A stretch of 63,989 bases of DNA, counting the filler, from Octopus bimaculoides (Eukaryota), in the NCBI RefSeq assembly GCF_001194135.2. It is 7 parts of 5 records of this genome, joined end to end, with 100 filler letters (N's around TTAATTAATTAA, not from the genome) between each part and the next. Parts side by side here need not be neighbours in the genome. Positions count along the whole stretch, not along the records: positions 32,676 to 49,861 come from NC_068993.1; 6 more parts are not named here. One strand, 5' to 3'. The notes under the pieces are model-generated. The model made no database searches. It saw nothing but the letters and a program-made list of their open reading frames with translations, and was not told the origin of the DNA. A program made the translations under genes and the position numbers. Shown piece after piece: positions 28,278 to 59,246 of this stretch. Within the stretch, counting starts at the first letter, position 1. Each line of letters opens with the position of its first letter.

Positions 28278-28320
<43 letters not shown>

Positions 28321-29268: not shown

Positions 29269-29347
29269 CTCTACGAATACAGCTGTTGAGAAATTCACGA
29301 GTATCAGTCTTGTAATTTTTACTTGTGAGATCTTCACAGAATTGTAA
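29269..29347 (-). CDS. Candidate isolated internal exon (LQFCEDLTSKNYKTDTREFLNSCIRR)
   Basis: Acceptor CCTTTACTCTAG, donor GAG|GTAATG, open frame, phase 0 to 1; no partner exon found. Confidence 0.25.
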
Positions 29348-30039
29348 CTAGAGTAAAGGTATTAATAAGTTCAGGCTAGCATCTTTAGACATTGTTTACG
29401 TTATATGGCTACAGTTCATGTGTGAGAGAAATTCACTCCTGAACTTTAGTCATTTCGTTCAAAAACTATAACTGTAGTTACTCTAGCTATTTTCTTTGTT
29501 TTCGTTCTGCTATGGTATCGTGTCATTTGTTTTTCTCTTACTACAAAAGTCCGTTTAACATTAATGCTGTACGATTGGTTAAATCATTAGAAAGTCGGAC
29601 AAACTGCTTTACAAAATTTGTTCCAGCTCCTTACGATCTGAATTCAAATATCACCGAAGTCACTTTTCATTCACTTCTCTCCAGGGTCGATAGAATAACG
29701 TACCAGTCAAGTACTGGCTCAATTTAATCGGGCATATGCCTTCCCTATAAATTCCTTGTCTTGTGCTAATTGTGGAAATTGTTTTCATGCACAATAACTG
29801 CAGAATTAAACTCTGTTCCTTTAAGTCTTCGTTTCAAAACACAACGTGGCCGGTGTTACCTTTCTCCTGGAATCGAGGACGAGTGTACTAGTGAAATATT
29901 GACTCTAGTTCAATCGTAAAATACAAGACTCTATCACTCTAAGGTTCGATACTTGCGACAGGAAATAACTTCATGAATTAGTTTATGCATAAACATCTGG
30001 ATATCAATAAAATAATTACAGATCAAATATTCTTTTCTA

Positions 30040-30190
30040 CTCTAGGCACAAGGCCTGTAATTTTTTGGGAGGCGGATGGCTATTCCATTAGATCGACCCC
30101 AGTACGTAACTGGTACTTAATTTATCGACCACGAAAGAATGAAAGGCAAAGTCGAACTCGGCGAAATTTGAACTCAGAACGTAAAGACAG
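30040..30190 (-). mobile_element. SINE family C
   Basis: Reverse of TTCTGAGTTCAAATTTCGCCGAGTTCGACTTTGCCTTTCATTC..GTCGATAAATTAAGTACCAGTTACGTACTGGGGTCGAT. Confidence 0.75.
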
Positions 30191-31604
30191 ACGAAATAAT
30201 AACTGATCAAATATTAATATATATTTAATCGAATTCTCTCGTTTCACTCCCCATTATCGCCGTAATTCCTTCAACATAGTGTGTGCCTTTGTGACAAAGT
30301 TAAACATCCTTATCAAAATACAGTGGTGGTGGAGAAGGACAAATATTTTGTAGTTTTTATTTACGTATCATTAAGTTCCAAGGTTCGAATCACACAGTGA
30401 TTCATTCTACTTTGTAATCAACAAAGGAATTCACAAACTACCAATATTGTACTCTGAATGAATTCAATCAAATGTACTCTCTATTTTTCATAATCTTTAT
30501 AAAAACCCTATAAAACACGGGGGAAACCACATTTAAATTTCTATTTTGCTTCAAACCTAAAATTCATTTCTAAATTATTCTAAATGAGTCTATGTCATTC
30601 CGACCAACTTCAAGTTTTATAATTTGCCCATTTATACACAAAAATCTATTTCTTCCATTATCTCGCCTTCCTTGTCTTTCTGTTATACTTCCTTCCACTC
30701 TATTTCCTTCAATTCTCTTTTTTCCTTTTATGTCTTCCTATTTCTGATTCTGTGATGATGTCGTTACGTTAATATCCATCTGTACTTAATGTTAGCGACT
30801 TTATCTTGCTTCACATGTCTGGAATATTGGCATTCTTCGTGTAATGCCTTTAGAATCCGTTTCATTAACTTGACATCAAAAAGCATATTTCACAAATGTA
30901 TCATTCGTTACAGACTAGATAGACTTCTATATTTCTAATGCATTTTAAAAAATGTATTATATAAAAACGACGACGGAGAGTAAAAACAGGAAAAAGTGCA
31001 GATGGGAGAGCCATGAGAGTGGATTAAATGCAGCATTTGTCTTTTATATTTGCCGAGTTGACAGAGAAATAAAAAGCGAAAAATCTTGTGACAGTATAAA
31101 ATTGGTAGTTCTCTCCTAACATTTTAACCTCTTCCACAATATTTAGAATTTTTATATTTGCTATTTTTCTTTCAGTCATTTCACTGTGGTCATGCTAGCG
31201 CACTGCTTTTAAAGGTTTTAGATGTACCGACCCACACCTCGTCCCTCAGTAGTTTTAAGTCTGGTGCTGATTCTATCGTTATCTATTGCCGATCTGTTAT
31301 GATAGGGGAAGTAAACAAAGCAACGGTTGTCAAGCTGTGGGTGGAAGACAAATACAGAAATAAAGACACACACACACACACTTATATAGACCGGGCAGCG
31401 CGTTGTGTTCTTGAGCAAAACATTTCATCTCATGTTGCCCTGCGATCATTTTCGACACTGTTCAGGCAATTTGGTGGAGGGAGTGATCAAATGTATGGCA
31501 CATACATTTGATCACACTATAAAAAAATTTGTGCAGGTCGTTCGGAAAAAGCCGAAAACTCGAACGTCGTCTTCAATGGGAGAATCTATTCTATATATAT
31601 ATAG

Positions 31605-31800
31605 CTATTCTTTCATTTGTTTCAGTCATTTGACTGCAGCCATGCTGGAGCACCGTCTTTTGTCGAACCGAACAAATCGACTTATTCATTGGAAGCCTAG
31701 TACACATCCTATCGACCTCTTTTGTCAAGCCGCAAATTTACGGGGACGCAAAGACACCAACATCGGTTGTCAAGTGATAGTGGGGAACAAAACACAGACA
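31605..31800 (-). mobile_element. SINE family B tail
   Basis: TTTCAGTCATTTGACTGCAGCCATGCTGGAGCACCG..GGTTGTCAAG. Confidence 0.75.
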
Positions 31801-31809
31801 CACAAACAT

Positions 31810-31844
<35 letters not shown>

Positions 31845-32071
31845 TTCCATTATTTCAAATTCTATGTACTAGAATTTTAAGGATATTCATAGCTCTTTTA
31901 CACCACAAACGCAAACGCTAAGACACTCTTCAGCATAATTCCAATGCTGGAATAAGGAGTTGGGGTATATACACACACACACACACACACACACATACTC
32001 AGAGAGAGAGAGAGTGAGGGAGAGAGAGATAGAGAGAGAGAGAGAGAGAAAGAAAGAAAGAGAGAGAGAGC

Positions 32072-32122
<51 letters not shown>

Positions 32123-32478
32123 GGAGAGAAAATGAGAGAGAAAGAGATTTACAAACGTAGACTTGCTAATTAATCTTTACAAATTCAGAAAGTGTTTAAT
32201 TACTTGCCGTCTCTGAGAAGATTCGGAGAGATGGATTTTCGTGTAAAGTATAGATCATTAAATATACTCAAATTTTTGTGTTTGCCGTTGCTTTTGTTGT
32301 CTTTCTTCGCCTTGTCGTGTCTCATATTCTATCATTTATAATTACAAACACACACACAAACACACACACACATATATAAATATACATGACATGATCTATG
32401 ACATATGAATATGTGTGTATATATACTTGCGTACATGTGTATATATATATATGTGTGCGTGAGTGTGTTTGTGTGTAT

Positions 32479-32575
<97 letters not shown>

Positions 32576-32675
32576 NNNNNNNNNNNNNNNNNNNNNNNNN
32601 NNNNNNNNNNNNNNNNNNNTTAATTAATTAANNNNNNNNNNNNNNNNNNNNNNNNNNNNNNNNNNNNNNNNNNNN
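32576..32675. other. Artificial scaffolding spacer
   Basis: 44N+TTAATTAATTAA+44N. Confidence 0.95.
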
Positions 32676-32678
32676 GAC

Positions 32679-32734
<56 letters not shown>

Positions 32735-32814
32735 GGAGTCAGAGACACAGAGAGAGAGACGGAGTGAGAAAGAGAGATATGTATGTACGCATGCACGTAT
32801 GTATGTATGTATGT

Positions 32815-33400
32815 AAATACTTCATCCAAAAGTACCATGTGGTTGTCTGTCGAGAAATTTCTTGCATGTTTATCCTACATGTACAATTTTGTAATTTCTA
32901 TTAATAAAAGAAGCATGTGTATGGGTAGAGAAATAATACAAAACCTTTTTCGAACTTCCTGTTTTTTTTAACTCCTTCTCTCGCTAGAAACCATCAAGGT
33001 GCTTGAAAAAGTGGTAATCGGTAAGAAAAAGGTCTGGGGAATAAGTTGGGTGGGGAAGAACTTCGTAGCCAAGTTCCCTCAACTTCTAGAGCGTCATTAG
33101 TGAAACGTGTGCTCAAGTATTGTCATGAAGAATGATTGACCGCTTCTGTTGACCAGTCTGAGACGCAGGTGTAGCAGTATTTCGTTTATTTTCGTAATTT
33201 CATGGCAATATGTTTCTGCAGTAATGGTTTTTAAGAAGTTATAGTGGATGAGTCCAGCAGTACACCACCAGTCAGCATAACCTTCTTTTTGAAGATCTCG
33301 GGTTTAGGGAAGGTTTTCGGTGTTTCATTTTTATCCAACCACTACGAAGAACGTTTTTTTGTTATTGTACAGAATCCACTTTTCATCGCCAGAACTCAAC
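32815..33400 (-). pseudogene. Mariner transposase relic (Hsmar1/SETMAR-like DD34D)
   Basis: GDEKWILYNN..WLDKNETPKTFPKP..GLIHYNFL..IILHDN..KLRELGYEVLPHPTYSPDLFLTDYHFFKHLDGF*, with stops and frameshifts. Confidence 0.9.
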
Positions 33401-33998
33401 TTGCCAGTCATCCGCTTTTCATGGTATGTGTAAGTGACCAAGATCACAATATTCCCTATAAACGAACACCCGGTCCGCTGCAGGATTTAAAGACAGTAAT
33501 TTTGAAGGTGGGGGTGCCAGTTAATGACATCAACCCCAGCAGTTAACTGAGACATTTTTATCGATCACGAAGAGAAAAGAAAACAAATTTGACATCAGTG
33601 GGATTTGAACTCCAAACGTTATGAGCTCCGAAAGATTCGAGATTGTGATTTCGATTCGCAGACAGATTGGTGCGTTGTATTCTTGTACAGATCATTACAT
33701 TTCACGTTGCTCTGCTGTCACTTCGACATCCGACGTGCGACACAACGTGAACCTCTACAGACAACGTCGGTGTGATATTAGCCATGAGCTAATGTGTCAC
33801 AGGAACTTACGACCACTAGAAACAAATCATCTGTACAGGTTGTTCAGCAAGACATTGCGGGACACCCCCGTATGTCTTTTACTATGTTAAAGACCATAAT
33901 AAAAAAAAATACACACAGGTTCCACGTGAGGAAACAAAATTACATATTCAGTGAGCATTTCATTGGCTCGGTGTGAACATGGCCTATTACAGTATTAA

Positions 33999-34402
33999 TC
34001 TTTTACTCTTTTATTTGTTTCAGTCATTTGACTATGGCCATGCTGGAGCACCGCCTTTAGTCGAGCAAATCGACCCCGGGACTTATTCTTTGTAAGCCTA
34101 GTACTTATTCTATCGGTCTATTTTGCCGAACCGCTAAGTTACGGGGACAGAAACACACCAGCATTGGTTGTCAAGCAATGCTAGGGGGACAAACACAGAC
34201 ACACAAACACACACACATATACATATATATACATATATACGATGGGCTTCTTTCAGTTTCCATCTACCAAATCCACTCACAAGGCTTTGGTCGGCCCGAG
34301 GCTATAGTAGAAGACACTTGCCCAAAGTGCTACGCAGTGGGACTGAATCCGGAACCATGTGGTTGGTAAGCAAGCTACTTACCACACAGCCACTCCTGTG
34401 CC
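33999..34402 (-). mobile_element. Full-length SINE family B inserted into the left arm only
   Basis: Complete head, microsatellite and tail; absent at the homologous site (~43720-43745) of the right arm. Confidence 0.9.
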
Positions 34403-35289
34403 TATGTCGGTTTGGTAAATTGGAAGGTTTGTGCTTTGAAGGTGATGGTAATCTTAACAGCCTTTTGTCAATCAAATATTGAAAGTAATTCAATAATACA
34501 GAGCTTTATTTGTTATCCGAATGTATCATAAGAAGTAGGGACATGTGCCTAACAACATGAAGCTCAGAATGAATTATATAAAGAAATACACAACAAGAGC
34601 AAACGTACATTAATAATATATTTCTTTAGTAAATAAGAGTTTCTTCACCGGATTTTCCAAAGATTATATCGTTGCTGGTAATATCTTCTCACTTGTAGGA
34701 TCTGGTGAAAGCGGTGGCAGAATCCAGTGTTCAAGATGCGTTAATATTTTATTAACATTTGCGAGACATCACTTACAGACTTACAGCGAAGACATGAGCT
34801 GGAATCAACATTGGCGGAGTATGAGCGGATAAGAAATGAATGAGTCCAGAGTATCTGAGTGAGCTTGACGCAAGATCAAGTAGAAATACTTGTAGGAGCG
34901 ATACTTCATGTCATTTTGAAGAGGAAGGAATGGGTATAGAGTAAAGTGAGCTGAATTCAACATGGTCAGGATATGAACGAATGAGAAGTGTGTGAGTCGA
35001 GAGTATCTGAGCGAACGTGACGCGAGATCAAGTAGCAGCGGTGGGCAGAGGCTGGAGAGTGGTTAGTGATTAGGTGCTAATCAAGCGAACGCCTGGGCGT
35101 GGCATAACACTGTCCCAGGTGTAGGAGCAATACTTCATGTCGATGAAACTTCAGGTTGAAGAGAGCAAGAATATGTTGGAGTATGGTGGGGATGATTCAT
35201 TTTCTGTCTTTGAATTAAAGGGTTATTGATTGGTGTTAAGTCCTAATTATGTTACCACAAAAGAACATAAGAGAGATGGCTGATTATAG

Positions 35290-35670
35290 CTAGGCCTAAT
35301 ACCTGGATCAACCATGGGAAATCCGGTTGAGTACACCTCATGTACAAAGAAGAAACATAATGAACTACTAGCAGAAATTCGAAACCAAACGACATGGTCT
35401 GTTGTGAAAGCAAGTGGTATTGTTTCACGACAATGCACACTCACATTCGCCTGCCCAAGCCCTTGAAATCACTGAAGAATTGGGTCTCCAGCTTTTGGAA
35501 TACTCTGCATAACATGCAGATCTCGTTCCTTCCGTTTATCAATTCTTTGGACTGCTCAAACATCCTTTAAGACGTCGTCGATGTGATAATGACGAGGATG
35601 TGCAGAACGCGCTGCATGGATACCTGTGCGATCAGCCGAAAAGCTTCTGAATTATCAAGTATGTGGATCC
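35290..35670 (+). pseudogene. Second mariner transposase relic (C-terminal catalytic part)
   Basis: LFHDNAHSH..EELGLQLLEYSA*HADLVPSVYQFFGLLKHPLRRRRCDNDEDVQNALHGYLCDQPKSF vs the HDNARPH..HPPYSPDLAPSDYHLFGPLK..F.NDEDV consensus. Confidence 0.8.
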
Positions 35671-36187
35671 TCCCAAAGTTGCCATATTGTAGGGTCGAAA
35701 ATGAGAACTTGTAGATGGTAAATGAACTTTTTAACCATTCGGCTGTAAAGTTTGTCTAGATGTAATAAAGATGTAATAAAGAGCGAAGAAAATCTTAACA
35801 GATAAAATGGAGTTGGCACTGAGATGATCCGAAGAGAAGCAATAATGAAGAACACAAATAAAAATTGAATATGGGTCCACAGAAACTCTACCCAGCATAA
35901 TCTAGGCACACGAAAGCAGCTAGAGAACAGAATATTTAGAATATTTGCTGATTTCCTCGCATTCACCTTCAAGCTCGCACACACTATTGATACTAAATAA
36001 ACTTAAAAAGGAAAGGGTGACCTCGGTGCAATTTGAACTCAGAATGTAGAGCGTCGGAAAAGTGAAAGAAAGTATTCTGCACAACATGCTCAACATTCCA
36101 CCAAACTACTACACGTGATATGTACTTACGATAATGAATTATTAAAGCTAAAGGTAATCGCGATTGGACTCCACTCTTTCTACCTGT

Positions 36188-36225
<38 letters not shown>

Positions 36226-37471
36226 NNNNNNNNNNNNNNNNNNNNNNNNNNNNNNNNNNNNNNNNNNNNNNNNNNNNNNNNNNNNNNNNNNNNNNNNNNN
36301 NNNNNNNNNNNNNNNNNNNNNNNNNNNNNNNNNNNNNNNNNNNNNNNNNNNNNNNNNNNNNNNNNNNNNNNNNNNNNNNNNNNNNNNNNNNNNNNNNNNN
36401 NNNNNNNNNNNNNNNNNNNNNNNNNNNNNNNNNNNNNNNNNNNNNNNNNNNNNNNNNNNNNNNNNNNNNNNNNNNNNNNNNNNNNNNNNNNNNNNNNNNN
36501 NNNNNNNNNNNNNNNNNNNNNNNNNNNNNNNNNNNNNNNNNNNNNNNNNNNNNNNNNNNNNNNNNNNNNNNNNNNNNNNNNNNNNNNNNNNNNNNNNNNN
36601 NNNNNNNNNNNNNNNNNNNNNNNNNNNNNNNNNNNNNNNNNATATATAATTATGTGTATTTCTTCTATCTTAATGAATAAAAATTCTTCTGATAAAATAA
36701 ATGGGTTAATAGAAACGTTCCGAACGTTCGTGTGTGCGGATGTGTGTATGTGTGTGTGCGTGTGTGTATAAATATGTATGAATGTGTGTATATAATTTTC
36801 CTCTTGTTCAAATTCCACCGAGGGAAACTTTGTCTTTCAGTCTTTCGTTAATTGTTAAGAGAGCATAAATAATGGGTGGTAGCCGGGTGGAATTTTATCA
36901 CAACGTAGCACTGATTGCTTTCCTGTACTTGCCTGAACGTTATACATTCTGAGTTCAAATTCCACAAGGTCAACTGGACCTTTAAGTCTTTCGAGATCGA
37001 TATAAAAAGTACCAGTCCTGAGCAATGAACTGGCTGAAACATAAGAACGCTGCACAGGATCCATTGCGTTCTTATTTCAAATCTCGTTGTTTCCTAGTCG
37101 GGTGGTAGAATTCATCCTCCGTTTAGCTTAACACATCATCCTCTGTTACATTGGGTAATTTCATCAGAGCGCACAATGTTAGAAGCATTCCTGCTAGGTC
37201 ATCGCTTTCAAGAAAACTTCATGTGTTTCAGAAAGAGCCCCTTTCAGAATATCAGGGGCGCTGCTTTCCCCATTGTGGGACAAAAAAAAAATGGAATAAA
37301 TGAAGTATAACATGAAATATAAGAAACATGAATGTAAAACGATAAACAACGGAAAGAGATTTCAAGTGGCTTTCTATGAAATTATTGTAAACATCCTGTT
37401 TCAGTTGCTTCTCCCAGTTTTATCGTTTTCATGTCAATATTTTGTAACTTAAATCACGAGACATTAACGAA

Positions 37472-37508
37472 TATAAATGCATATATTAAATACATAATAT
37501 TTCATATT
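37472..37508 (+). promoter_or_regulatory. Possible TATA box (37472-37478) and initiator (TCATATT, A at 37504)
   Basis: ~32-nt spacing, 87 nt upstream of ATG 37591; such motifs are common in AT-rich DNA. Confidence 0.25.
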
Positions 37509-37590
37509 TATATTAGCAACGAGAAACCATTTTGTTATTAAATTTCCCTGAAGGACTTGAGTCGAATTTTGAAGAAAGAAAAACAACGCT

Positions 37591-37684
37591 ATGGGAAGGA
37601 TAACGAACATCGTGATATTTTCACTTTTCGTGTTCTGTCAAGGAATATACGCAGCCGTTAATATTGAGACTAAAATAACGGAAG
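37591..37684 (+). CDS. Secreted-protein gene exon 1: signal peptide MGRITNIVIFSLFVFCQGIYA-AVNIETKITE
   Basis: ATGG start, basic n-region, hydrophobic core, small-residue cleavage region, consensus donor GAAG|GTGAGT, phase 1. Confidence 0.85.
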
Positions 37685-37981
37685 GTGAGTGTGTTATTTC
37701 AATTAGATATTTCACACACATTTATAACATGTTGACGATAATGATGATGATATGCTGTGCATGTATATGTGTGTGTGTGTGTGCGTATAACGTTCTGTTC
37801 TGTGACGGTAAACATGCAAATTATTATATATATGCATGTGTAAGCATGCAAACATATAAATAAATATATACAACTATACATACATGCGTAGGTATGTATG
37901 TACGTATGTACAAGTGAGTGGACGAATGAAAGTAAAAGGCACTGAAGGCGTTTAGTAAAACAGCTTGAATACCCCCGAGCA

Positions 37982-38139
37982 ACCTAAAGTTTCGCAGGCG
38001 TCTAACAGAAACCTAGCGCATTCAGGCAAGATTACTTTTTGACCAAACAGGGCAAGCCATTGAATTTCTATCTTTCGCCATTCGGTAATCTGTGCCTGAA
38101 CCCGCCAGGTTTTTGTTAGAAGCGTGCGAAACGTTAAGT
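37982..38139. repeat. Intronic inverted repeat, ~55-bp arms
   Basis: 37982-38035 vs reverse of 38085-38139, about 78% by eye. Confidence 0.7.
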
Positions 38140-38956
38140 CGTCTGGAACTGAATGAAACTGTCCTACATGACATGCTTCTGTCTATCTATGTATCTATAT
38201 ATATNNNNNNNNNNNNNNNNNNNNNNNNNNNNNNNNNNNNNNNNNNNNNNNNNNNNNNNNNNNNNNNNNNNNNNNNNNNATATATATCTGTCTATCTATC
38301 TATCTATCTACCTACCTATCTATCTATCTATCTATATATCTATCTATCTATCTATATATCTATCTATCCATCACTATATGTGTGTGCATGTGTGCGTGTG
38401 TGTATAAAATTAGAGATAGATCTAATTCTAAATTTATATATACTAAATCTATTTAGATGTATTTGTATGTGCAGTCGTATTTTCTCTAACCTTACACTCC
38501 AATCTCTTTCGCTGTCTCTTGTCCAATCCTCCAAAACGTTCCTCTTAGCCTTATCGATACATTCGTCTCTGTCAATCCCTAAGACCGTGTTCTGTTCATT
38601 TATTTCCTCTTTGTCCCCCGTCCGTCTACTCACAGTCTCGTCTTGAATCCTACTTATTTATATTTGTATGTCCACTTCTGTATTGCACATTTATTCATTT
38701 CTTGTTTATTCGTTCCTGAGCTGTTATGTTTGGTCCCATTTCGCGCCAGCTTCTTGTTGGTACCATCAGAATTGAATCAATATTACCGTAAGGCGCGAAA
38801 TTGCGATTGACCCTTTGGCAGAAAACTAATGAGGAATTGGTGACTTTCTGTGTCGGTTTTCTGTTTGCTTGTGCATGTATTGTTTTAAACTTACACAAAC
38901 ACAAACACACATTTACATACATATATACATGCATACATGCATGTATACATACGTAC

Positions 38957-39009
<53 letters not shown>

Positions 39010-39607
39010 CNNNNNNNNNNNNNNNNNNNNNNNNNNNNNNNNNNNNNNNNNNNNNNNNNNNNNNNNNNNNNNNNNNNNNNNNNNNNNNNNNNNNNNNNNN
39101 NNNNNNNNNNNNNNNNNNNNNNNNNNNNNNNNNNNNNNNNNNNNNNNNNNNNNNNNNNNNNNNNNNNNNNNNNNNNNNNNNNNNNNNNNNNNNNNNNNNN
39201 NNNNNNNNNNNNNNNNNNNNNNNNNNNNNNNNNNNNNNNNNNNNNNNNNNNNNNNNNNNNNNNNNNNNNNNNNNNNNNNNNNNNNNNNNNNNNNNNNNNN
39301 NNNNNNNNNNNNNNNNNNNNNNNNNNNNNNNNNNNNNNNNNNNNNNNNNNNNNNNNNNNNNNNNNNNNNNNNNNNNNNNNNNNNNNNNNNNNNNNNNNNN
39401 NNNNNNNNNNNNNNNNNNNNNNNNNNNNNNNNNNNNNNNNNNNNNNNNNNNNNNNNNNNNNNNNNNNNNNNNNNNNNNNNNNNNNNNNNNNNNNNNNNNN
39501 NNNNNNNNNNNNNNNNNNNNNNNNNNNNNNNNNNNNNNNNNNNNNNNNNNNNNNNNNNNNNNNNNNNNNNNNNNNNATATATATATATATATATATATAC
39601 ATTGGTG

Positions 39608-39674
<67 letters not shown>

Positions 39675-40066
39675 GTCTGTGTGTATCTTTGGGTTTGTGC
39701 TCTTAGTTGTGTTATTAACCGACCAAATCTTGATAACTAGTGTTCACTTGTTTATGTCCCAATAGCATAACAATTCCGCATAAGACACCGGTAGAGAAGT
39801 TTCACGATTAATAGTAAGCACTGGGGTGGATTTCACTCACTAAACTTTTCATGGTGGCTTGGGGGGCATCGCTTGGGAGCATCGCTGCAGTTCAATGAAT
39901 GAAAACTAGTGAAGATTAGAGATAAAAGATTCATTTTTGCGTGTCCGCTGCGTGAGTAGGTGCGAGTTAGCATGTGTTTATATACGTGTGCATCTCCTTA
40001 CACATGATGCTATCACGTAATACAGTGACATATTTATGCATTTATTTCCATTCGTTTTGTTTACAG

Positions 40067-40264
40067 GCAAGACTTCCCATGGAATAGCTCTTTGGCAGGA
40101 AATGATGTACAAACGGCGAGTGTATGAAATGCTCAACAAGAAGATAACAGATATCGGTTCGCATGACGGTACAAAAAATAGTGGATTGCAAAATAGGAAC
40201 CTCGAGTGCATATGGAAAAATGTTGTGCTAACATGTAATGCAACTTTACCTCGCCTTCAGACAT
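40067..40264 (+). CDS. Exon 2 (GKTSHGIALWQEMMYKRRVYEMLNKK...LECIWKNVVLTCNATLPRLQT)
   Basis: Acceptor TTCGTTTTGTTTACAG, donor CAT|GTAAGT, 198 bp, phase 1-1, open, joins exon 1 in frame. Confidence 0.85.
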
Positions 40265-40859
40265 GTAAGTATTACATTGACATTAACACCTCTTTTTCGA
40301 ACATCAAAATCTCAGTGAAAGCAAGAATTAAATCAAACATCTTGTGAATCTTCGACCTACAAGAATTGCCAATCAAAACTCAAACGAATCACAGACTGCC
40401 GTCTCAAAAGGAAGACAAACAAATACAATGAAAATTGCAATAAAAATGTCTGAATAGAAACAAGGAATGAGTCTACCGGGCGCAGCTGTTTTGACGCTGA
40501 TGTGTTTGCATGGTTGTCGGGATACTCAAACTCTTTTGGCTATCCGTCTCTTTCTTTGATATATGTATGTATATATATATATATATATATGCATTGATTA
40601 CTTACATATATAAACAGACTTACACCAACTACCATTCAATATAAATACTTGATTTGTCAGAGTTCATCCCGCCTCTCAAGGAGGATTAGTACTTACCAAA
40701 TAACTACTGAGACTAGCACAACTCGAAAAGAGAGTTAATTTTACGGATGAAGAATTTCACCAAAATTGACATGCCGTTAAAGTAAACGACGGGCTTATGT
40801 CTGGAGATATCAAGTCAGACTCGTGCGCTTGTTTCTGGCTCAACAGGCAGATATATACA

Positions 40860-41040
40860 CCTAGTTTAAATTTACTGAAGGCAAAAGACGAAGACAGGTG
40901 TGGGAGCAACAAGCAAGAATATTAGTTTAACCCTCTAGACATATGGAAAAGTCTTTTGTATTTCGAGCCTACGCTCTTTGAAAGAAAGTATTAAGAGGAA
41001 AAAATGGGGAGAGAATGAAAAAAAACGGAGATAGATAAAA
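40860..41040 (-). mobile_element. Penelope-like terminal-repeat fragment, same family as 7030-7200
   Basis: AAGAGCGTAGGCTCGAAA..AAAAGACTT..GCTTGTTG..ACACCT.TCTTCGTC shared. Confidence 0.5.
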
Positions 41041-41067
41041 CGTGCAGCATTCAACGGTCCAGCATGG

Positions 41068-41098
<31 letters not shown>

Positions 41099-41149
41099 TA
41101 GATAAATAGATAAATAGATACATAGATAAGATAGATAGACCGACGTGCT

Positions 41150-41285
41150 TCTACATAGCTTCCGTCTACGAAATTCACTAACGAAGCATTGGTCAGCCCA
41201 TGTCTATAGCAGAAAACACTTGCCAGTGCTGGGATTGAACTGAAACCAAATGGCTGGGAAGCGAACTTCTTAAACATACACCCAT
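41150..41285 (-). mobile_element. SINE family B head, degenerate
   Basis: AGCTTCCGTCTACGAAATTCACT..CTATAGCAGAAAACACTTGCC..GGGATTGAAC. Confidence 0.65.
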
Positions 41286-41448
41286 GACAGCACCAAACGT
41301 TTTTAATTTGTTAGTATTTATCATTTATTTACTTTTTAGTGTCTGTGCTATTTCTGTTTTCATGGCATCTTACAATTTCACAGATACTAAACAACTCGGA
41401 CATAACGTGATAACAGGACCATCTTCTGTTATTTGAAATCCTTTACAG

Positions 41449-41568
41449 ATACTAGTAATATGGACCACAGTGGACCCGAAGTTCTTGAAATCCTAAGCTC
41501 TCCCACACAGCTTACCACCGAATGCATATCAATTTCATTCACCTCTTTCATCTCTTCCCATTCGTTCA
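41449..41568 (+). CDS. Exon 3 (YTSNMDHSGPEVLEILSSPTQLTTECISISFTSFISSHSF), MAM-like motifs
   Basis: Acceptor CCTTTACAG, donor TCA|GTAAGA, 120 bp, phase 1-1, open; DHS, LxSP and CxSxxF resemble the MAM motifs DHT, LxSP, CLxF. Confidence 0.85.
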
Positions 41569-42182
41569 GTAAGATGCCGGAAATTTTGAACTAAGCAAAG
41601 ACACATGTTTTTACGTCCCAGTAGTTACGTCTCTTCCTGTTTACATTGTTGTTCACAAGCCGTAATAAATAAAACAATTTCAAATATTATATTTTTCTCT
41701 TTTCCAGTTTCTGTTATACTGCGAATATCCAAGTATTTAATCCATATCACCGTTTTAACAGATGGTAATGAAATTAAAAATCAAATAATGCGTGAGTGTC
41801 ATTTAACATTCCTAATACAATATATACATACATACATACATACATACATACAAACAAACAAACATACATGCATACATGCATACATACATACATACATACA
41901 TACAGTTCTATGTTCATAGATGCACTCATTGATACATATACGCGTGTGTGTATTAGATACAGATCTATGTATACACGTATACAGGTGGTTGTTTTTGTGT
42001 ACGTGTGTATGTTTGTATATATATATATATATCCATGTGAGTGAGTGCGGATGAGTAGGTGTTTGCGCATGAGTGGATGTGTGTATGTATTACGAATATA
42101 CATCTAGTGAGCTTATATATTAATGTCTTTTTTTGCATTTCTGTAATCTCTAAAATTAGATTTTCTTCTATATTTCTTACAG

Positions 42183-42419
42183 ATATGTATAACGATCCTG
42201 TTAGAAGTCTGAGTTTCACCGTAGGATCCGCAAGTGTTTTGTTTAGTATATGCGTGGAAAATCGCACTGAGAAACATTTTAGAATATGTTTTCGCGTTAA
42301 TTACAGCGTATTCTTCTTCCAAAAAACATTGTATCTTGGTTGTTTCAATAAACCCCCTCTTTCTTCTCAAAATATCTCATTAGACAGTGTCAAGGATTCG
42401 TTGCAATTTTCCGATACTG
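42183..42419 (+). CDS. Exon 4 (NMYNDPVRSLSF...HFRICFRV...NISLDSVKDSLQFSDT)
   Basis: Strong acceptor TTCTATATTTCTTACAG in phase 1; best phase-1 donor is CTG|GCAAGT (GC-AG). Otherwise the frame runs to TAA at 42482-42484. FRIxF and ISLDSV resemble MAM FxIxFE and IALDDI. Confidence 0.75.
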
Positions 42420-42869
42420 GCAAGTTCCGCAGCGTTGAAAATAACGTTGAATACCTTTGTTATTTCATGGAGGATCAGAAGTAAATATGATTTGAACTTA
42501 GTGACAACAAGCTACATATGGTCATTAATGTATCTGAATGAAAACAAAGCTAATGTATATATTGATATTACAATGAACGCATAACCCTTTCGACTATGAA
42601 CCAGTATGTTTGCCCAATTATTTACCTTTCTACACGGATATGTTATGATCTATGGAAAACGTCTACTCTGTATTCCCTTGACGAGAATTGAAACAACTCT
42701 CACTTTGACAATTATTGTTTTATTCTACTTATTTTCAACATTTCAAAGCCAAAGAGACAGTTGTTAACCGAGAGAAACCTCAAAACTTATAATCCATCTT
42801 TTTCTCCCACTTCGCCCTCACCCACCTCTCTTTTCCTCCTTAATTGCTTCCAGCAACTCATCTGTCCAA

Positions 42870-44075
42870 CCATATCCGTCGAGCATTACACGAACTTTTA
42901 TTTCTGTAATTTATGGGAACATAAACAAGCGTTGAACAATTACATCATTTCCGACATTGTGTACTTGCTTGTCGATGTACTTCTTTCAGAAATCCACATA
43001 CTTGATTATTCAGAAGCTTTTCGGCTGATCGCACAGGTATATATGCAGCACGCCCTCCACATCTTCGTCATTATAACATCGACGACATCTTAAAGGATGT
43101 TTGAGCAGTCCAAAGAATTCATACTCTGCCCAAGTTGAATTCAGCTCACTCTACTTTATGCCCATTTCTTCCTGCTCAGAACATCACCTTTCTGACATTA
43201 CCTGCATTCATGCTCATGTCTTCGCTGTACGTCTGTAAGTGACGTCTCGCAAGTTTAAATAAAACATTAACGGCAACTTAGACCCTGGATTCTGACTCCA
43301 CTTTCTCCAAACCCAAGTGAGAAAATATTATCAGCAACGAAATAATCTTTGAAGAAGCCGATGAAGAAACACTTATATCCTCAAATATATTATTAACGTA
43401 CATTTGCGCCTGTTGTGTATTTCTTTATATAATTCGATTTGTTCTGTGCTTCATGTTGTTAGACATATGTCTCTACTTCTTATGATACACTTGGATAACA
43501 CAAATAAAACTTTATATGATTGAGTTACTCTCAATATTTGACTGAGAAAAGACTGTTAAAGTTACCAAAATGATAGTAGGTTTATAGAATTATTTAATTG
43601 TTTATGGTAATCCAATGCGTATCCATGACTTTACCCCATACCATTAATTTTCATGCGATCTTTCGTACGACCAACAAATAAATAATTGCCATTTGACTTC
43701 GGGTTTTGTAAACCTTCAAACTTACTTAACAAACAATACTGTAAAAGACGATGTACACACTGATCGAATGAAATGCTCACTGGATCTTTAATGTAGTAAA
43801 AGACATACGGGGGTGTCCCGCAATGTCTTGCTGAAAACCTGTACAGATGATTTGTTTCTAGTGGTCGTAAGTTCCTGTAAAACATTAGCTCATGGCTAAC
43901 ATCACACCGACGTTGTCTGTAGAGGTTCACGATGTGTCGCACGTCGGATGTCGAAGAGATAGCAGAGCAACGTGAAATTAAGTGTTTTGCACAAGAATAG
44001 AACGCACCAATCTGCGAATCGAAACCATAATCTTGATCCCGTTAGTGCAAAACTCTAATCACTACACTACACGGA
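42870..44075 (-). repeat. Right arm of the inverted duplication (mariner tail + spacer + SINE family A)
   Basis: Reverse complement aligns to 33633-35672, lacking the SINE-B insertion and ~34970-35530; keeps more of the mariner C-terminus and the SINE-A head. Confidence 0.85.
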
Positions 44076-44793
44076 TCATTCACGCTCTTTGTTATATATA
44101 CACACAAACACACACACACACACACGTATATATATATANNNNNNNNNNNNNNNNNNNNNNNNNNNNNNNNNNNNNNNNNNNNNNNNNNNNNNNNNNNNNN
44201 NNNNNNNNNNNNNNNNNNNNNNNNNNNNNNNNNNNNNNNNNNNNNNNNNNNNNNNNNNNNNNNNNNNNNNNNNNNNNNNNNNNNNNNNNNNNNNNNNNNN
44301 NNNNNNNNNNNNNNNNNNNNNNNNNNNNNNNNNNNNNNNNNNNNNNNNNNNNNNNNNNNNNNNNNNNNNNNNNNNNNNNNNNNNNNNNNNNNNNNNNNNN
44401 NNNNNNNNNNNNNNNNNNNNNNNNNNNNNNNNNNNNNNNNNNNNNNNNNNNNNNNNNNNNNNNNNNNNNNNNNNNNNNNNNNNNNNNNNNNNNNNNNNNN
44501 NNNNNNNNNNNNNNNNNNNNNNNNNNNNNNNNNNNNNNNNNNNNNNNNNNNNNNNNNNNNNNNNNNNNNNNNNNNNNNNNNNNNNNAACTCTAATCACTA
44601 CACTACACGGATCATTCACGCTCTTTGTTATATATACACACGCGCATACCGACACACACGCGCACTCACGTATGCATGTATGTGTGTATGTATACGTTCA
44701 TTATATGTGTAGAGGGACCGATTGGAGGATCAATAAATCTTAATAATAATAGAATTTTTCATTCTTCAATTTTCTTTATTTCGCTTTTTACAG

Positions 44794-44810
44794 TTGTCTG
44801 TTACAATTAA
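44794..44810 (+). CDS. Candidate terminal exon 5a (VVCYN*)
   Basis: Long pyrimidine acceptor TTTTCTTTATTTCGCTTTTTACAG, phase 1; would add a closing Cys as expected at a MAM C-terminus. Confidence 0.4.
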
Positions 44811-45029
44811 TCTCAAAAAAAATATCTCTAAGCTCAATATATTTATCAACGAACCCAATATCTATATTTGTCTTCCGATTAATGTTTTTTTATTTTTATT
44901 TTGTCAATCTAAAAATAGTTCTCTTGTTGGGTTTATGCAATTGAATATGAAGCTCTCAAATCTTCAAGGTAGTCATTGAATTGATATTTGCGTTATTGAC
45001 ATAGAAATTGGTCCGCCACGTCGACCGTT

Positions 45030-45202
45030 CTAATATTGTTTTTTTGTGCAGCCAATTTGATTGTTGAAATTATAATGATCAGCATGATAATCAGCCTTAA
45101 AACACAACAGGACACTTTTCGTGGAGAAAGATTCGAGTTTCATCTCAAACTCGAGTTTTACATGCGAAACAGGGATATCAAGCTTGCGGTCTTTATTGCG
45201 AT
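45030..45202 (-). CDS. Candidate terminal exon of the - strand gene (DRNKDRKLDIPVSHVKLEFEMK...QIGCTKKQY*)
   Basis: Acceptor TTACTTTATATCGTTCACAG, phase 1, compatible with a phase-1 donor at 47246. Confidence 0.4.
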
Positions 45203-45245
45203 CTGTGAACGATATAAAGTAATTATACATAATAAAGTGAACTAG
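45052..45245 (+). CDS. Alternative terminal exon 5b of the + gene (ANLIVEIIMISMIISLK...HNKVN*)
   Basis: Acceptor TTGTTTTTTTGTGCAG, phase 1, open; codon-registered antisense to 45030-45202, so one may be a shadow. Confidence 0.3.
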
Positions 45246-45475
45246 AGTGTATAAATGCCCACAAGCTCCCACACACACACACACATACACACGTGCATAT
45301 GATTTGAATAATACATTAACTCCGAATAAATGTGTTTAGTACACTTTCTTTTGTTTGTCCACTCACTCGTGTGTGTATNNNNNNNNNNNNNNNNNNNNNN
45401 NNNNNNNNNNNNNNNNNNNNNNNNNNNNNNNNNNNNNNNNNNNNNNNNNNNNNNNNNNNNNNNNNNNNNNNNNNN

Positions 45476-45876
45476 TATTTAAAAGAGTTCCAACTCTGTC
45501 TGTTTTTTATGTTTTATTTATATTCTTGTAAAATTAATGTGGGATATAGAATATGGAATATATAATATATAATATAAAAATGGATGGTACAGTCTGTTAC
45601 AGTCTGTTACAGTCTGTCAGATACCGGCCATGATGAAATACCACAAGGTATTGAAAATACGTATTCGCCTTTATATATTTAATCCTTTATATTGAACACT
45701 CAATATTTCATATATTCAATAAGACATATTCCATATATTCAATAAGACATTCAATACTTTATTTCATTGTACCATCCATTTTTATATTATATATTCCATA
45801 TTCTATATCCCACATTAATTTTACAAGAATATAAATAAAACATAAAAAACAGACAGAGTTGGAACTCTTTTAAATA
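45476..45876. repeat. Young fold-back, ~110-bp near-identical arms, hammerhead-like motif in the loop
   Basis: 45476-45590 vs reverse of 45768-45876 differ essentially by one ~5-nt indel; left arm abuts a gap. Confidence 0.85.
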
Positions 45877-47189
45877 AAATTATATATATACATACATATA
45901 CTCTATTATTTCATTTCCTCCTTCTCTACTTTTCTTCTCTTCAAGTTTTTAGGTAAACTCCTGCACAAATTATATGCTGTCCTTGTAATGTAGAAGCTGT
46001 TAAGTTCAATACTCTCCAAAGCCGATTGTTTTTTGTTTTTTTTTTCTTTTTGATTAAATATTATCGCCAATAAATTACTTTTACTATATAAACCTCTGAC
46101 ATGTATCGACTTTCACTTATTTCAGAAAACAATACTAATGTCCTTTGAGCGATTGGTACTTACCATCTAAATGCCCGTTCATCTTTACGCTACCTGCGTT
46201 AACTTCGTAAACTAGATACGGGTAGTAGTCATGCATTTTCACACATACTGAAAAATATAAACAAGACAGAAGACCAAACTTTATTAGTATGAAAAACAAA
46301 GAACAAACTCCATTACATAAATAATGGGTTTCTGATAAAAGTACAAGAGCAGCAACTTAAGTGGGCCAACGGTTTGTCTTTACTATCGATCCTAGTACTT
46401 CACTGGTACTTTATTCTTGTTAGTACCGTGGCCCCAAGGCGGTAAACTGACAGAATCGTTAGCACACCGGACACAATACTTAACGGCAATGGGGACTCGT
46501 TGATAATTTATATAAACCCTTGTCAATATTGAGTACCCTTCGTACCCAAGAACTTTAACTGTTGATGACTTAGTACCTGAATTTTTTGAAAATAGGAATG
46601 TATACTAGATATAAGTACTTGGCTCATATCATTTCATTAGTACTATTTTTAATGAAATGGCGATTCAAGTTTTGATATAGCTCCAAATACAATCTATTGA
46701 AAACAGTTCCTGTATAATTTCTGTTGTTTTGGGAGGGTCATTATACCTATAATAAACATACGCAATGGTTATATTTCACTCCTTTACTATTTATTTCTTT
46801 AACCAATAAACTGATAATCGATTGCTTGGTTAATCGTTTGACCAATCATTCTATAAATTAGGTTTGTTAGCAATATCTGTTTCAGCATATGTGATCACAC
46901 AAGAGATCTTACAAACCAAATACGAAAATGCTTGTATATTATTTGCAGAAAGCACAACAAATGCCTCACTTTTACGAGCTTTGATAAAAAAGTATCAGTA
47001 CTGGTTCTGTAACAATAAAAATACAACACATATCAATTCGGTATTTAATTTCCTTCGCAGTTGTTCCCTTCTGAAGTCATACACTTTATCTTGTGTCATT
47101 CATAGAAGCATTTCAAGAACACCTTCCTTGAGGATAGGAGCAGCTGCTTCGTCGCATTCTCTTCGATCTCTTCGACGCCCTGGATTTCT

Positions 47190-47380
47190 TCAATGCCTTG
47201 GATTTTTCGACGCCTCGGATTTCTTTTTCCACTTCAAAGACTGACCCTTGACTTCGGTGTCATGACCCGTTTTGAAAATGTTTTCGTCTCCCAAGACATA
47301 ATCAAGGAGATCCTTCGCAGCTGAATCCTGATCTTCTTTTCGAGACGACCACACTCTGCAGACTTTACTTCCAGGCACTA
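47190..47380 (-). CDS. Minus-strand gene exon B (LVPGSKVCRVWSSRKEDQDSAAKDLLDYVLGDENIFKTGHDTEVK...), unknown product
   Basis: Acceptor TTTGTTGTTTACAG, phase 1, only open frame; ends at TGA 47190 or at donor AGG|GTCAGT after 47246. Confidence 0.7.
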
Positions 47381-47669
47381 CTGTAAACAACAAACGTGAA
47401 CAAGAGCGTTTTAACTAGTGTGTATGCGAGACAGAGTTGAAGGTGAATTTGTGCCAAGCGGCTTCAGACTGCGTATTTTAGCTCCGTTACCATAGCAACA
47501 GTCCAAATATTTTTGATCAGACCTAGTATTTTAACATGGAAGATTATGCGTTGTAAATAAATACCAAATAATAATCAAACAAAAATAACATACAAATAAA
47601 TGTACATACCTATGTTCAGAATTAAATGGAATTTAAAACAGCACTTTCCATTTCTACCTTCCCACTTAC

Positions 47670-47813
47670 ACTTCATTCTTGGCGCAGCAGCCTTCACGTC
47701 TATGTTTGTAATTTCCAGAGCAAAACCAGTATTGGGGGTTTGGGTGAGCTTTTCATCAACCTGGAGTTCTTCAACAATTTCTTCTAGAACATTAATCATT
47801 TCATCATCTATAC
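47670..47813 (-). CDS. Minus-strand gene exon A (IDDEMINVLEEIVEELQVDEKLTQTPNTGFALEITNIDVKAAAPRMK), unknown product
   Basis: Acceptor TTTACAATATTTTTAG, donor AGT|GTAAGT, 144 bp, phase 1-1; splices in frame to exon B over a 289-bp intron. Confidence 0.75.
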
Positions 47814-48440
47814 CTAAAAATATTGTAAAAGGCATTCATCAATATTTACCTTTTTGACCAGAACATACACAAACGCACTCACAGACGCATATGCGTCCTA
47901 ACACGACGGACATCCACCCAGTAGACCCTGTTTCCACCTACAATATCAGCCGCCCCACACATATAGGATCCCTATACACACTCCATACCTGCACAAATAC
48001 TCCGAATGAATTAACCAAAATAAAAACAAAACACACACAAACCGGCAAACAGATACCTGTGAGACCTTTGGACACCGGTTAACCTCCTTTCCTCGACAAC
48101 GCTAAACATATAGTACCACTCTACAAGAACACCAGGCCCAAAACCAACACACATTTTTCATACACACATTTCCAGAAAAATCTTGTTGTCTTGCAATATC
48201 TCTAGAGGTGGATTTCGTGCCGAAAGACATATCTTGTTCAGTTGCGAATAAAAACATCGTAAAATAATTGAAACAAATGAACAAATGAAAAATCCAAAAT
48301 AGTATTAATTTAGTCGCAGGTTCTTTTATATTTTGGTTCTGTGACCTAACTTATAACCTAACTCAAAATATATGCAACATCGTACTTCTTTAATTGAGTA
48401 CAGGAGTTCAACTATGCAGAGACATTAGATCCTCATACTA

Positions 48441-48697: not shown

Positions 48698-48801
48698 TGC
48701 ATGTTGCTTGTTGCGCATTTAAAGGAGAACATATGTGTATATATGTCGGGAGATGGGTTGCATTCCTATGTATATATATATGTGTGTGTGTGTGTATGTG
48801 C

Positions 48802-55506: not shown

Positions 55507-55559
<53 letters not shown>

Positions 55560-55569
55560 TTATATATAC

Positions 55570-59182: not shown

Positions 59183-59205
59183 ATGAATATATATGAACAT
59201 ATACA

Positions 59206-59246
<41 letters not shown>

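What the first reader, a model, noticed from the sequence alone, without database searches (positions are those of the whole stretch)
33633..44075. Old inverted duplication brackets exons 1-4 of the secreted-protein gene
Arms 33633-35672 (+) and ~42870-44075 (-) are collinear over SINE-A, ordinary-looking spacer and an inward-pointing mariner tail, enclosing ~7.2 kb with the putative promoter and four exons (seen). This could be a composite/fold-back transposon that carried the gene, or a substrate for inversion that would detach exons 1-4 from exon 5 (inference).
Basis: partly seen in the sequence, partly recalled or inferred. Interest (0 to 1): 0.7.

Follow-up and report, generated by a model that had tools for sequence, protein, structure and literature searches.

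The report
Old inverted duplication flanking an octopus gene
Two diverged, oppositely oriented copies of a 1-2 kb patch of dead transposon debris flank one small secreted-protein gene in the Octopus bimaculoides genome; this is most likely an inert scar of an old breakage-and-repair event, not a transposon or a working inversion switch.

Summary
The inverted arms are real. Five collinear blocks (33637-35668 vs 44036-42992) match at 82-92% identity, with BLAST E-values down to 1e-101. Both arms end inward in the same truncated mariner transposase remnant. Divergence is roughly uniform (K2P 0.09-0.16), which fits one duplication about 12-22 My ago.

The locus is Octopus bimaculoides chromosome CM046613.1. 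The enclosed gene is LOC106876288 (XP_014780267.1, 225 aa, with a signal peptide). It belongs to a cluster of at least four paralogues oriented + + | - -.

I found no TIRs, no intact transposase and no target-site duplication, so the composite or fold-back transposon idea fails. The longest perfect match between the arms is 43 nt, so they are poor recombination substrates today.

The best reading is an inert inverted segmental duplication, possibly the footprint of a staggered-break micro-inversion of the gene.

Two things could not be tested. Genome-wide copy number of the arm is unknown. The left arm sits on a 3.5-kb contig bounded by gaps, so its orientation rests on scaffolding alone.

The finding is ordinary and of low interest.

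The parts
32880..33560 (-). Separate, 5'-truncated Hsmar1-like mariner remnant just outside the left arm. It is not part of the duplication.
   Evidence: Matches the SETMAR transposase domain, residues 26-191, E 7e-33, with frameshifts and stops. It has no counterpart near the right arm.
33637..35668 (+). Left arm, 2032 nt. In order: SINE-like block A, short spacer, SINE-B insertion, unclassified block B, ~152-nt duplicated minisatellite, dead mariner ORF fragment.
   Evidence: Collinear inverted BLAST blocks with the right arm. Edges tested.
33637..33893 (+). Block A ('SINE-A'), left copy. An A-rich stretch follows at 33898-33908.
   Evidence: 91% identical to 44036-43785, E 1e-99. No tRNA match.
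33997..34410 (-). SINE-B insertion, present only in the left arm, so it arrived after the duplication.
   Evidence: Absent at the matching point of the right arm, with homology on both sides. Five more copies lie within 27 kb of the locus. 29 representative protein clusters contain it.
34446..34805 (+). Block B, the unclassified 'ordinary' spacer, left copy.
   Evidence: 82% identical to 43567-43206, E 1e-101. No transposase similarity in any frame.
34795..35035 (+). Internal ~152-nt tandem duplication (34795-34883 is about 80% identical to 34947-35035). It is only partly represented in the right arm (43181-43118).
   Evidence: (D7). TRF does not call it.
35290..35668 (+). Dead mariner transposase fragment, left arm. 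It points inward and ends about 30 codons before the natural C-terminus.
   Evidence: Matches SETMAR/Mos1 at E~5e-9, Mos1 residues 222-315 of 345, with in-frame stops.
37591..42484 (+). LOC106876288 (XP_014780267.1, 225 aa, signal-peptide start MGRITNIVIFSLFVFCQGIYA). CDS exons: 37591-37684, 40067-40264, 41708-41791, 42183-42484. TATAAA at 37472.
   Evidence: Annotated CDS range. Exon reconstruction. Exact sequence look-up.
42992..44036 (-). Right arm, 1045 nt. Reading on the minus strand from 44036 down to 42992: block A, spacer, block B, part of the minisatellite, and the last 132 nt of the same mariner fragment. It carries a ~560-nt deletion relative to the left arm.
   Evidence: The mariner ORF runs continuously across 35537 in the left arm, so the deletion is in the right arm.
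44139..44586 (.). Assembly gap abutting the right arm. 44051-44104 equals 44587-44640, after which the CA-microsatellites differ. It is probably a false gap or an allelic overlap.
44781..47813 (-). Exons 2-4 of the convergent paralogue LOC106876287 (XP_014780266.1, 183 aa): 47813-47609, 46247-46164, and 45202 down to at least 44781. Exon 1 lies outside the piece.
   Evidence: A spliced Logan transcript contig maps at 99.5-100% identity. Protein identity. BLASTP against LOC106876288 gives E 5e-9.

Best explanation
A patch of about 2 kb of already-dead repeat debris was copied once, in inverted orientation, to the other side of the small gene LOC106876288 in the Octopus bimaculoides lineage. The patch consists of a SINE-like element, unclassified spacer, a minisatellite and an internally truncated mariner ORF fragment. 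The event dates to roughly 12-22 million years ago.

The copy was made by chromosome breakage and repair, not by transposition. The favoured specific route is an inversion of the ~7-kb gene-bearing segment made with a staggered break at one end. Fill-in and end-joining then leave the sequence between the nicks as an inverted duplication at both ends of the flipped segment.

Since then the two copies have decayed independently: 8-18% substitutions, a SINE-B insertion in the left arm, and ~560-nt and ~50-nt deletions in the right arm. They have no detectable activity now.

Shown: the duplication, its composite make-up, the lack of transposon ends, the gene content and the later indels. Inferred: a single event, its age, and the staggered-break or inversion route. 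I give the specific inversion route about 0.3 and the general 'inert inverted segmental duplication' about 0.6.
For: - Five collinear inverted blocks span unrelated sequence classes, with E-values down to 1e-101.
- Both arms stop at the same point inside a mariner ORF (Mos1 residue ~315 of 345). This is a shared derived breakpoint.
- K2P is 0.10, 0.16 and 0.09 in the three large blocks, and heterogeneity is only marginal (chi-square p=0.07).
- There is no homology beyond the edges and no transposase remnant at any flank.
- The SINE-B insertion is specific to one arm. The right-arm deletion interrupts an ORF that is continuous in the left arm.
- Arm components occur only twice in 27 kb of readable local sequence, where SINE-B occurs six times.
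- The arm ORF has no relative in the protein collection, whereas a SINE-B control hits 29 representative clusters.
- Inverted duplications of breakpoint sequence flank 17 of 29 Drosophila inversions, with mean identity 88%, and in 12 of those only one breakpoint region is duplicated (PMC1885836).
- Clock: JC 0.09 is about 25 My for octopus repeats (PMC13282606). Pooled pairwise K of about 0.12 gives roughly 17 My.
Against: - Genome-wide copy number of the arm could not be measured. No tool here searches the octopus genome, and both metagenome scans were empty.
- The negative is weak. The same tool missed XP_014780267.1 even though the query shared 32 identical residues with it.
- Block B is somewhat more diverged than blocks A and C (Fisher p=0.03).
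- Nothing shows that the enclosed segment was ever in the other orientation. The cluster reads + + | - -, so the gene matches its left neighbour as it stands.
- The left-arm contig's orientation is unverified.
Confidence: 0.6

Rival explanations
1. The two arms are independent insertions, or remnants, of a dispersed composite repeat family. This would be an unclassified non-autonomous element that happens to contain a SINE-like part and a captured mariner fragment. The two copies lie in opposite orientation by chance.
For: - About 66% of an octopus genome is repeats, with hundreds of unclassified SINE and TIR families (PMC13282606).
- Block B is slightly more diverged than blocks A and C.
- Genome-wide copy number is untested.
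Against: - No third copy of any arm block occurs in 27 kb of the locus or in about 24 kb of other cephalopod sequence, whereas SINE-B recurs in both.
- The arms have no terminal repeats or defined ends, and their outer and inner edges show no target-site duplication.
- The arm ORF has no database relatives, while a true multi-copy SINE does.
Confidence: 0.15
2. The duplication is real, but the arms are actually direct repeats. The 3.5-kb contig carrying the left arm (32676-36225) is bounded by gaps on both sides and was placed in the wrong orientation by the scaffolder.
For: - The left-arm contig lies between gaps 28204-32675 and 36226-36641.
- No transcript or gene model ties its orientation to the rest.
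- L002 and L003 are the same assembly (0 mismatches), and no independent assembly of the junction ORFs is on record.
Against: - The chromosome-scale release keeps this orientation.
- The other contigs are tied together independently. Exon 1 is linked to exons 2-4 by the gene model and by the paralogue's matching exon order. The right-arm contig is linked to LOC106876287 by the overlapping gap flanks and by a spliced transcript.
Confidence: 0.12
3. A composite or fold-back transposon: the arms act as long terminal inverted repeats that moved the enclosed gene as cargo.
For: The arms are inverted, contain transposon-derived sequence and bracket a complete small gene.
Against: - The mariner pieces are internal ORF fragments with stops. 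They lack both TIRs and point inward, so no transposase-binding end lies at either outer edge.
- The outer edges fall inside or next to a SINE-like block, with no target-site duplication.
- The gene sits among at least three local paralogues that diverged long before the arms did: 22% protein identity and no detectable DNA similarity between the two genes, against 82-92% DNA identity between the arms. It was therefore resident and not imported.
Confidence: 0.03
4. The arms are a live inversion substrate. Recombination between them still flips the gene cassette, so orientation is polymorphic.
For: Inverted repeats of 1-2 kb lying 7 kb apart have the right geometry for this.
Against: - Overall identity is 82-92% and the longest uninterrupted match is 43 nt.
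- The arms are interrupted by indels of 0.4-0.56 kb.
- From general knowledge, homologous recombination falls steeply with a few per cent divergence and needs longer perfect tracts in the animals where this has been measured.
- The whole CDS is inside the arms, so flipping would not split the gene.
Confidence: 0.03

Closest known systems
Inverted duplications at inversion breakpoints (staggered-break model; Ranz et al. 2007, PMC1885836)
   Same: The two copies lie in inverted orientation directly at the two ends of a segment. Identity is in the same range (88±5% there, 82-92% here). The case where only one breakpoint region is duplicated is common. No transposase is involved.
   Different: The segment here is only about 7 kb with one gene, against megabase-scale inversions there. 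The duplicated sequence is itself repeat debris rather than unique genic sequence. Inversion of the enclosed segment has not been shown, because no outgroup was available.
Inverted low-copy repeats or segmental duplications that mediate recurrent inversions by non-allelic homologous recombination
   Same: Inverted kilobase-scale duplicates flank a gene-bearing segment.
   Different: Active examples have long tracts of near-identity. These arms have at most 43 nt of perfect match and large indels.
Composite transposons and Foldback-type elements
   Same: Inverted arms containing transposon sequence bracket cargo DNA.
   Different: The outer edges have no functional element ends. There are no TIRs, no target-site duplication and no transposase source. 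The arms are a mosaic of unrelated fragments.
Tc1/mariner (Hsmar1/Mos1-like) elements
   Same: The inner 132-380 nt of each arm encode part of a mariner catalytic domain, including the HDN(A) motif region.
   Different: Only about 95 codons remain, with stops. The N-terminal two-thirds, the last ~30 codons and both TIRs are absent.

Membership tests
Tc1/mariner transposon (arm tails) | Recognisable DD(E/D) transposase sequence | tested here: met
   phmmer against PDB: SETMAR E 4.7e-9 and Mos1 E 1.8e-8, covering Mos1 residues 222-315. Pfam-A itself gave no hit.
Tc1/mariner transposon (arm tails) | Complete open transposase ORF | tested here: not met
   The fragment has in-frame stops and covers only about 95 of 345 codons. 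No further transposase signal appears in any frame of the arms or the inner flanks.
Tc1/mariner transposon (arm tails) | Terminal inverted repeats flanked by a TA duplication | tested here: not met
   Both copies end inside the ORF at the same nucleotide (35668/42992), and unrelated sequence follows.
Composite / fold-back transposon | Arms reach the element's outer termini, and the whole unit is flanked by a target-site duplication | tested here: not met
   The outer edges (about 33625-33637 and 44036-44050) fall within or next to the SINE-like block. The flanks share nothing above chance (score 8.0 against a null of 9.1±1.3; sequences). The right edge is blurred by gap 44139-44586.
Composite / fold-back transposon | The same arm-cargo-arm unit occurs at other genomic sites | not testable with these tools
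   No octopus genome search is available. Only 27 kb of the locus could be read, and it holds no further copy.
Staggered-break inversion footprint | Inverted duplication of one sequence abutting both ends of a segment | tested here: met
Staggered-break inversion footprint | The enclosed segment is inverted relative to the ancestral (outgroup) order, and the outgroup has a single copy of the duplicated sequence | not testable with these tools
   No orthologous locus could be fetched. Protein searches and contig look-ups were exhausted, and the 90% clusters of both proteins contain O. bimaculoides sequences only.
tRNA-derived SINE (block A, 'SINE-A') | tRNA-related 5' head | tested here: not met
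   ARAGORN found no genes. Rfam gave no tRNA match, even at E<=10 on 200-nt stretches. Only a by-eye resemblance to A and B boxes exists in the right copy.
tRNA-derived SINE (block A, 'SINE-A') | Many dispersed copies with unrelated flanks | not testable with these tools
   There are two copies in the piece. No hits in the protein collection or in the metagenome scans.
DUF4773 protein family (the bracketed gene and its paralogues) | Significant match to the Pfam DUF4773 model | tested here: not met
   hmmscan of P0002 and P0003 at E<=1 gave no DUF4773 hit. UniRef labels only LOC106876287 'DUF4773 domain-containing'. LOC106876288 is related to it by BLASTP, E 5e-9.
NAHR-competent inverted repeats | Long tracts of (near-)perfect identity between the arms | tested here: not met
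   The longest exact matches are 43, 42, 33, 32 and 31 nt. Overall identity is 82-92%, with indels of 0.4-0.56 kb.

The most novel reading that the evidence does not exclude
The arms are the scar of a gene-sized micro-inversion that flipped one member of a secreted-protein paralogue array. On this reading the flip gave the gene a new downstream context, since the first poly(A) signal after its stop lies inside the right arm. That change would have helped make it the most divergent member of the cluster. In the most novel form, the orientation is still polymorphic or recurrently flipped in octopus populations.
Probability: 0.05. Interest if true: 0.5.

Novelty: new member of a known kind. Interest (0 to 1): 0.2.

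Why it matters
If the inversion reading is right, this would be a clean kilobase-scale example, in a cephalopod, of the staggered-break mechanism described for large Drosophila inversions. It would also show how one member of a fast-evolving secreted-protein cluster was re-oriented and given a new 3' flank. Otherwise it is a routine old segmental duplication in a genome that is two-thirds repeats.

The practical value of the check is that it corrects the gene model in the finding (four coding exons, all inside the arms), identifies the locus (O. bimaculoides CM046613.1, LOC106876288 and LOC106876287), and flags that the 'inverted' call depends on an unverified scaffold join.

Tried and rejected
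1. Copy number through the protein collection. The arm ORF gave 0 hits. The tool's false negative weakens this result. A SINE-B control in the exhaustive search gave 29 clusters.
2. Exact-match scans of metagenome contigs with a block-B 25-mer and a block-A 22-mer both returned 0 hits. That collection evidently lacks octopus DNA, so the result is uninformative.
3. Sampling more octopus genome through SINE-B-containing proteins. Two proteins were not on record. Two loci were not octopus (L004 and L005). One 20-kb cephalopod locus and three short Logan contigs held SINE-B only. The sample is too small to bound copy number.
4. Is block B more mariner? All six frames of the left arm were compared with PDB and gave nothing.
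5. Does the flanking minus-strand mariner continue beyond block A, or does a mariner continue past the inner breakpoints? No signal was found. Frameshift-tolerant peptides were too short to score, so which arm is parental stays undecided.
6. A tRNA origin for block A was not supported.
7. Residual homology inside or outside the arms, and DNA-level paralogy between the two genes, were sought with nhmmer and local alignment. None was found.
8. Independent assembly of the arm junctions: none is on record. L002 and L003 are the same assembly as the window.
Pfam on the long ORFs gave nothing meaningful.
10. A search for the run accession SRR7158633 in the literature found nothing.

Full report
**Observation.**
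- A self-comparison of the piece (32676-49861) finds five inverted, strictly collinear matches between 33637-35668 and 44036-42992:
  - 33637-33893 / 44036-43785: 91%, E 1e-99
  - 33949-33996 / 43782-43735: 85%
  - 34446-34805 / 43567-43206: 82%, E 1e-101
  - 34914-34977 / 43181-43118: 83%
  - 35537-35668 / 43123-42992: 92%, E 4e-49
- A gapped alignment shows why the left arm (2032 nt) is twice the length of the right (1045 nt).
  - The left arm carries a 0.4-kb insertion of a different SINE ('SINE-B', 33997-34410, minus strand) at a point where the right arm is uninterrupted.
  - The right arm lacks about 560 nt (equivalent to 34978-35536) and about 50 nt around an A-rich stretch.
- Local alignment of the sequences just beyond the inner and outer edges scores at chance (14.5 vs null 13.1±2.1; 8.0 vs 9.1±1.3). 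The edges are therefore real, and the right arm is 42992-44036 rather than ~42870-44075.

**What the arms are made of.**
- The inner end of each arm encodes part of a mariner transposase. The left-arm translation (…VVLFHDNAHSHSPAQALEITEELGLQLLEYSA*HADLVPSVYQFFGLLKHPLRRRRCDNDEDVQNALHGYLCDQPKSF*) matches SETMAR/Hsmar1 and Mos1 at E~5e-9, covering Mos1 residues 222-315 of 345.
- The ORF points inward in both arms and contains stops. It ends at the same nucleotide in both, about 30 codons short of the natural C-terminus.
- The ORF is continuous across 35537 in the left arm, so the 560-nt difference is a deletion in the right arm.
- Block B (34446-34805) and the adjoining ~152-nt duplicated stretch (34795-35035) show no transposase similarity in any of six frames.
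I can call it SINE-like only by eye.
- A second, unrelated mariner remnant (32880-33560, minus strand; SETMAR E 7e-33) lies just outside the left arm and has no counterpart at the right arm.

**One event or several?**
- K2P distances are 0.10 (block A), 0.16 (block B) and 0.09 (mariner tail). Heterogeneity is marginal (chi-square p=0.07; A+C vs B, Fisher p=0.03).
- The collinearity runs across unrelated sequence classes, and the arms share a truncation point inside the mariner ORF. Both facts point to one duplication of an already assembled composite, not independent insertions.
- I used the octopus repeat clock quoted in PMC13282606 (JC 0.09 ≈ 25 My to consensus). A pooled pairwise K of about 0.12 then gives roughly 17 My, with a range of 12-22 My. 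This is an inference. It is about as old as the O. bimaculoides-O. vulgaris split quoted in that paper (13-33 My).

**Locus and genes.**
- A spliced Logan transcript contig (L001, run SRR7158633) maps at 99.5-100% identity to the minus strand at 47815-47604, 46249-46164 and 45203-44781.
- The protein cluster containing its product also contains XP_014780266.1, LOC106876287 of Octopus bimaculoides (183 aa; UniRef label 'DUF4773 domain-containing').
- The locus was fetched from GCA_001194135.2, chromosome CM046613.1 at about 8.30-8.33 Mb. It is identical to the window (0 mismatches, same N runs), so it is the same assembly.
- The annotation there places a 225-aa gene on the window's plus strand with CDS limits 37591-42484.
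- I reconstructed the gene from splice-site and phase logic as four exons: 37591-37684, 40067-40264, 41708-41791 and 42183-42484. An exact-sequence look-up confirms the product is XP_014780267.1, uncharacterized protein LOC106876288.
- It starts with a signal-peptide-like sequence (MGRITNIVIFSLFVFCQGIYA).
An 'exon 5' beyond the right arm is not supported.
- LOC106876288 and LOC106876287 are convergent paralogues.
  - They align by BLASTP at E 5e-9 and 22% identity over the full length.
  - They share the same four-exon layout, an 84-nt exon 3 and a phase-1 intron after exon 1.
- The next gene to the right (minus strand, window-equivalent 55.2-61.3 kb) and the tail of the left neighbour (plus strand, ending near 27.7 kb) are also family members.
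- The cluster therefore reads + + | - -, with the right arm at the point where orientation switches.
- The paralogues share no detectable DNA similarity, so the gene family is far older than the arms.
- Pfam gives no DUF4773 hit for either protein at E<=1.

**Assembly gaps.**
- Of the three listed gaps, 36226-36641 is intergenic and 38205-38279 and 39011-39576 are in intron 1. All three are flanked by microsatellites, and the latter two by the same type of repeat on both sides. None touches an arm or an exon, and no reading frame crosses one.
- Two further gaps exist.
  - 44139-44586 abuts the right arm. It is flanked by an identical 54 nt (44051-44104 = 44587-44640) followed by differing CA-repeats, so it is probably a false gap.
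  - 45379-45475 lies in an intron of LOC106876287.
- The relative orientation of the contigs carrying exon 1, exons 2-4 plus the right arm, and LOC106876287 is supported by the gene model, the paralogue's exon order, the overlapping gap flanks and the transcript.
- The left arm lies on contig 32676-36225, between gaps 28204-32675 and 36226-36641. Nothing but scaffolding fixes its orientation, and no independent assembly of the junction ORFs is on record.

- The arm ORF (block A plus spacer, 136 aa) has no relative in the 5.8-billion-cluster protein collection.
- A control ORF from SINE-B hits 29 representative clusters in the exhaustive search.
- The tool missed XP_014780267.1 even though the query shared 32 identical residues with it, so its negatives are weak.
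- Exact scans of metagenome contigs were empty for both arm probes. That collection probably holds no octopus DNA.
- Locally, SINE-B occurs six times in 27 kb of readable sequence, whereas blocks A and B and the mariner tail occur only in the two arms.
- About 24 kb of other cephalopod sequence held SINE-B only.
- The evidence leans towards low copy number but does not establish it.

**Interpretation.**
- The composite or fold-back transposon idea fails on anatomy.
  - No element ends lie at the outer edges, and there is no target-site duplication.
  - The mariner pieces are internal fragments pointing inward.
  - The gene is a resident member of an older local family.
- The idea of a present-day inversion substrate is weak.
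  - The longest exact match between the arms is 43 nt, at 82-92% identity and with large indels.
  - Flipping would not split the CDS.
- The structure does match the footprint described for inversions made by staggered breaks: an inverted duplication of breakpoint sequence at both ends of the flipped segment.
  - This footprint was found at 17 of 29 Drosophila inversions, with mean identity 88%, and in 12 of those only one breakpoint region was duplicated (PMC1885836).
- I therefore favour an inert inverted segmental duplication created by breakage and repair (about 0.6). A micro-inversion of the LOC106876288 segment is the most specific candidate mechanism (about 0.3).
- A copy-in by template switching, with no inversion, cannot be separated from this without an outgroup.
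- One side observation: no AATAAA or ATTAAA lies between the stop codon (42482-42484) and the right arm. The first is at 43258, inside the arm, so the gene's 3' end may now lie in the duplicated sequence. This is an inference.

**Verdict.** Copy number, contig orientation and outgroup state remain open.

Noticed in passing
window 44781-47813 (-) plus L001: A transcript-supported secreted-type gene, LOC106876287 (XP_014780266.1), lies tail-to-tail with the bracketed gene. Its poly(A) signal (about 44775) is only a few hundred nt from the right arm's outer edge, or less if gap 44139-44586 is false.
   Followed up: yes
window 47191-47381 (-): An unannotated open exon (…LVPGSKVCRVWSSRKEDQDS…NPRH*) has a good acceptor (ttgtttacag|). 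Its phase is compatible with an alternative donor at 47678. It could be an alternative terminal exon of LOC106876287.
   Followed up: partly
L002/L003, window-equivalent 27591-27738 (+) and 55191-61254 (-): Two more paralogues of the same small secreted-protein family lie here, giving a cluster oriented + + | - -. LOC106876288 is by far the most divergent member.
   Followed up: partly
window 44051-44104 and 44587-44640: An identical 54 nt lies on both sides of gap 44139-44586, followed by different CA-microsatellites. The gap is probably false (allelic overlap), so the estimated 448 nt may not exist.
   Followed up: partly
window 37951-38168; 45476-45877; 48366-48746; 48799-49373; 49520-49700: Five hairpin or palindromic repeats with arm identity of 72-94%. 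They look like MITE-type fold-backs. One is in intron 1 of LOC106876288 and one abuts gap 45379-45475.
   Followed up: no
window 35997-36161 and 36991-36820: An inverted pair of a third SINE-like repeat straddles gap 36226-36641, between the left arm and exon 1.
   Followed up: no
window 32880-33560 (-): A well-preserved Hsmar1-like mariner remnant (SETMAR E 7e-33). It is 5'-truncated within about 70 nt of the left arm's outer edge and is unrelated to the mariner fragment inside the arms.
   Followed up: partly
window 43258 (+): The first canonical poly(A) signal downstream of the LOC106876288 stop codon lies inside the right arm. None lies in the 507 nt between the stop and the arm.
   Followed up: no
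tool behaviour: The word-indexed protein search missed XP_014780267.1 even though the query shared its first 32 residues and the protein is in the collection as a cluster representative. Negatives from that tool should be read cautiously.
   Followed up: yes
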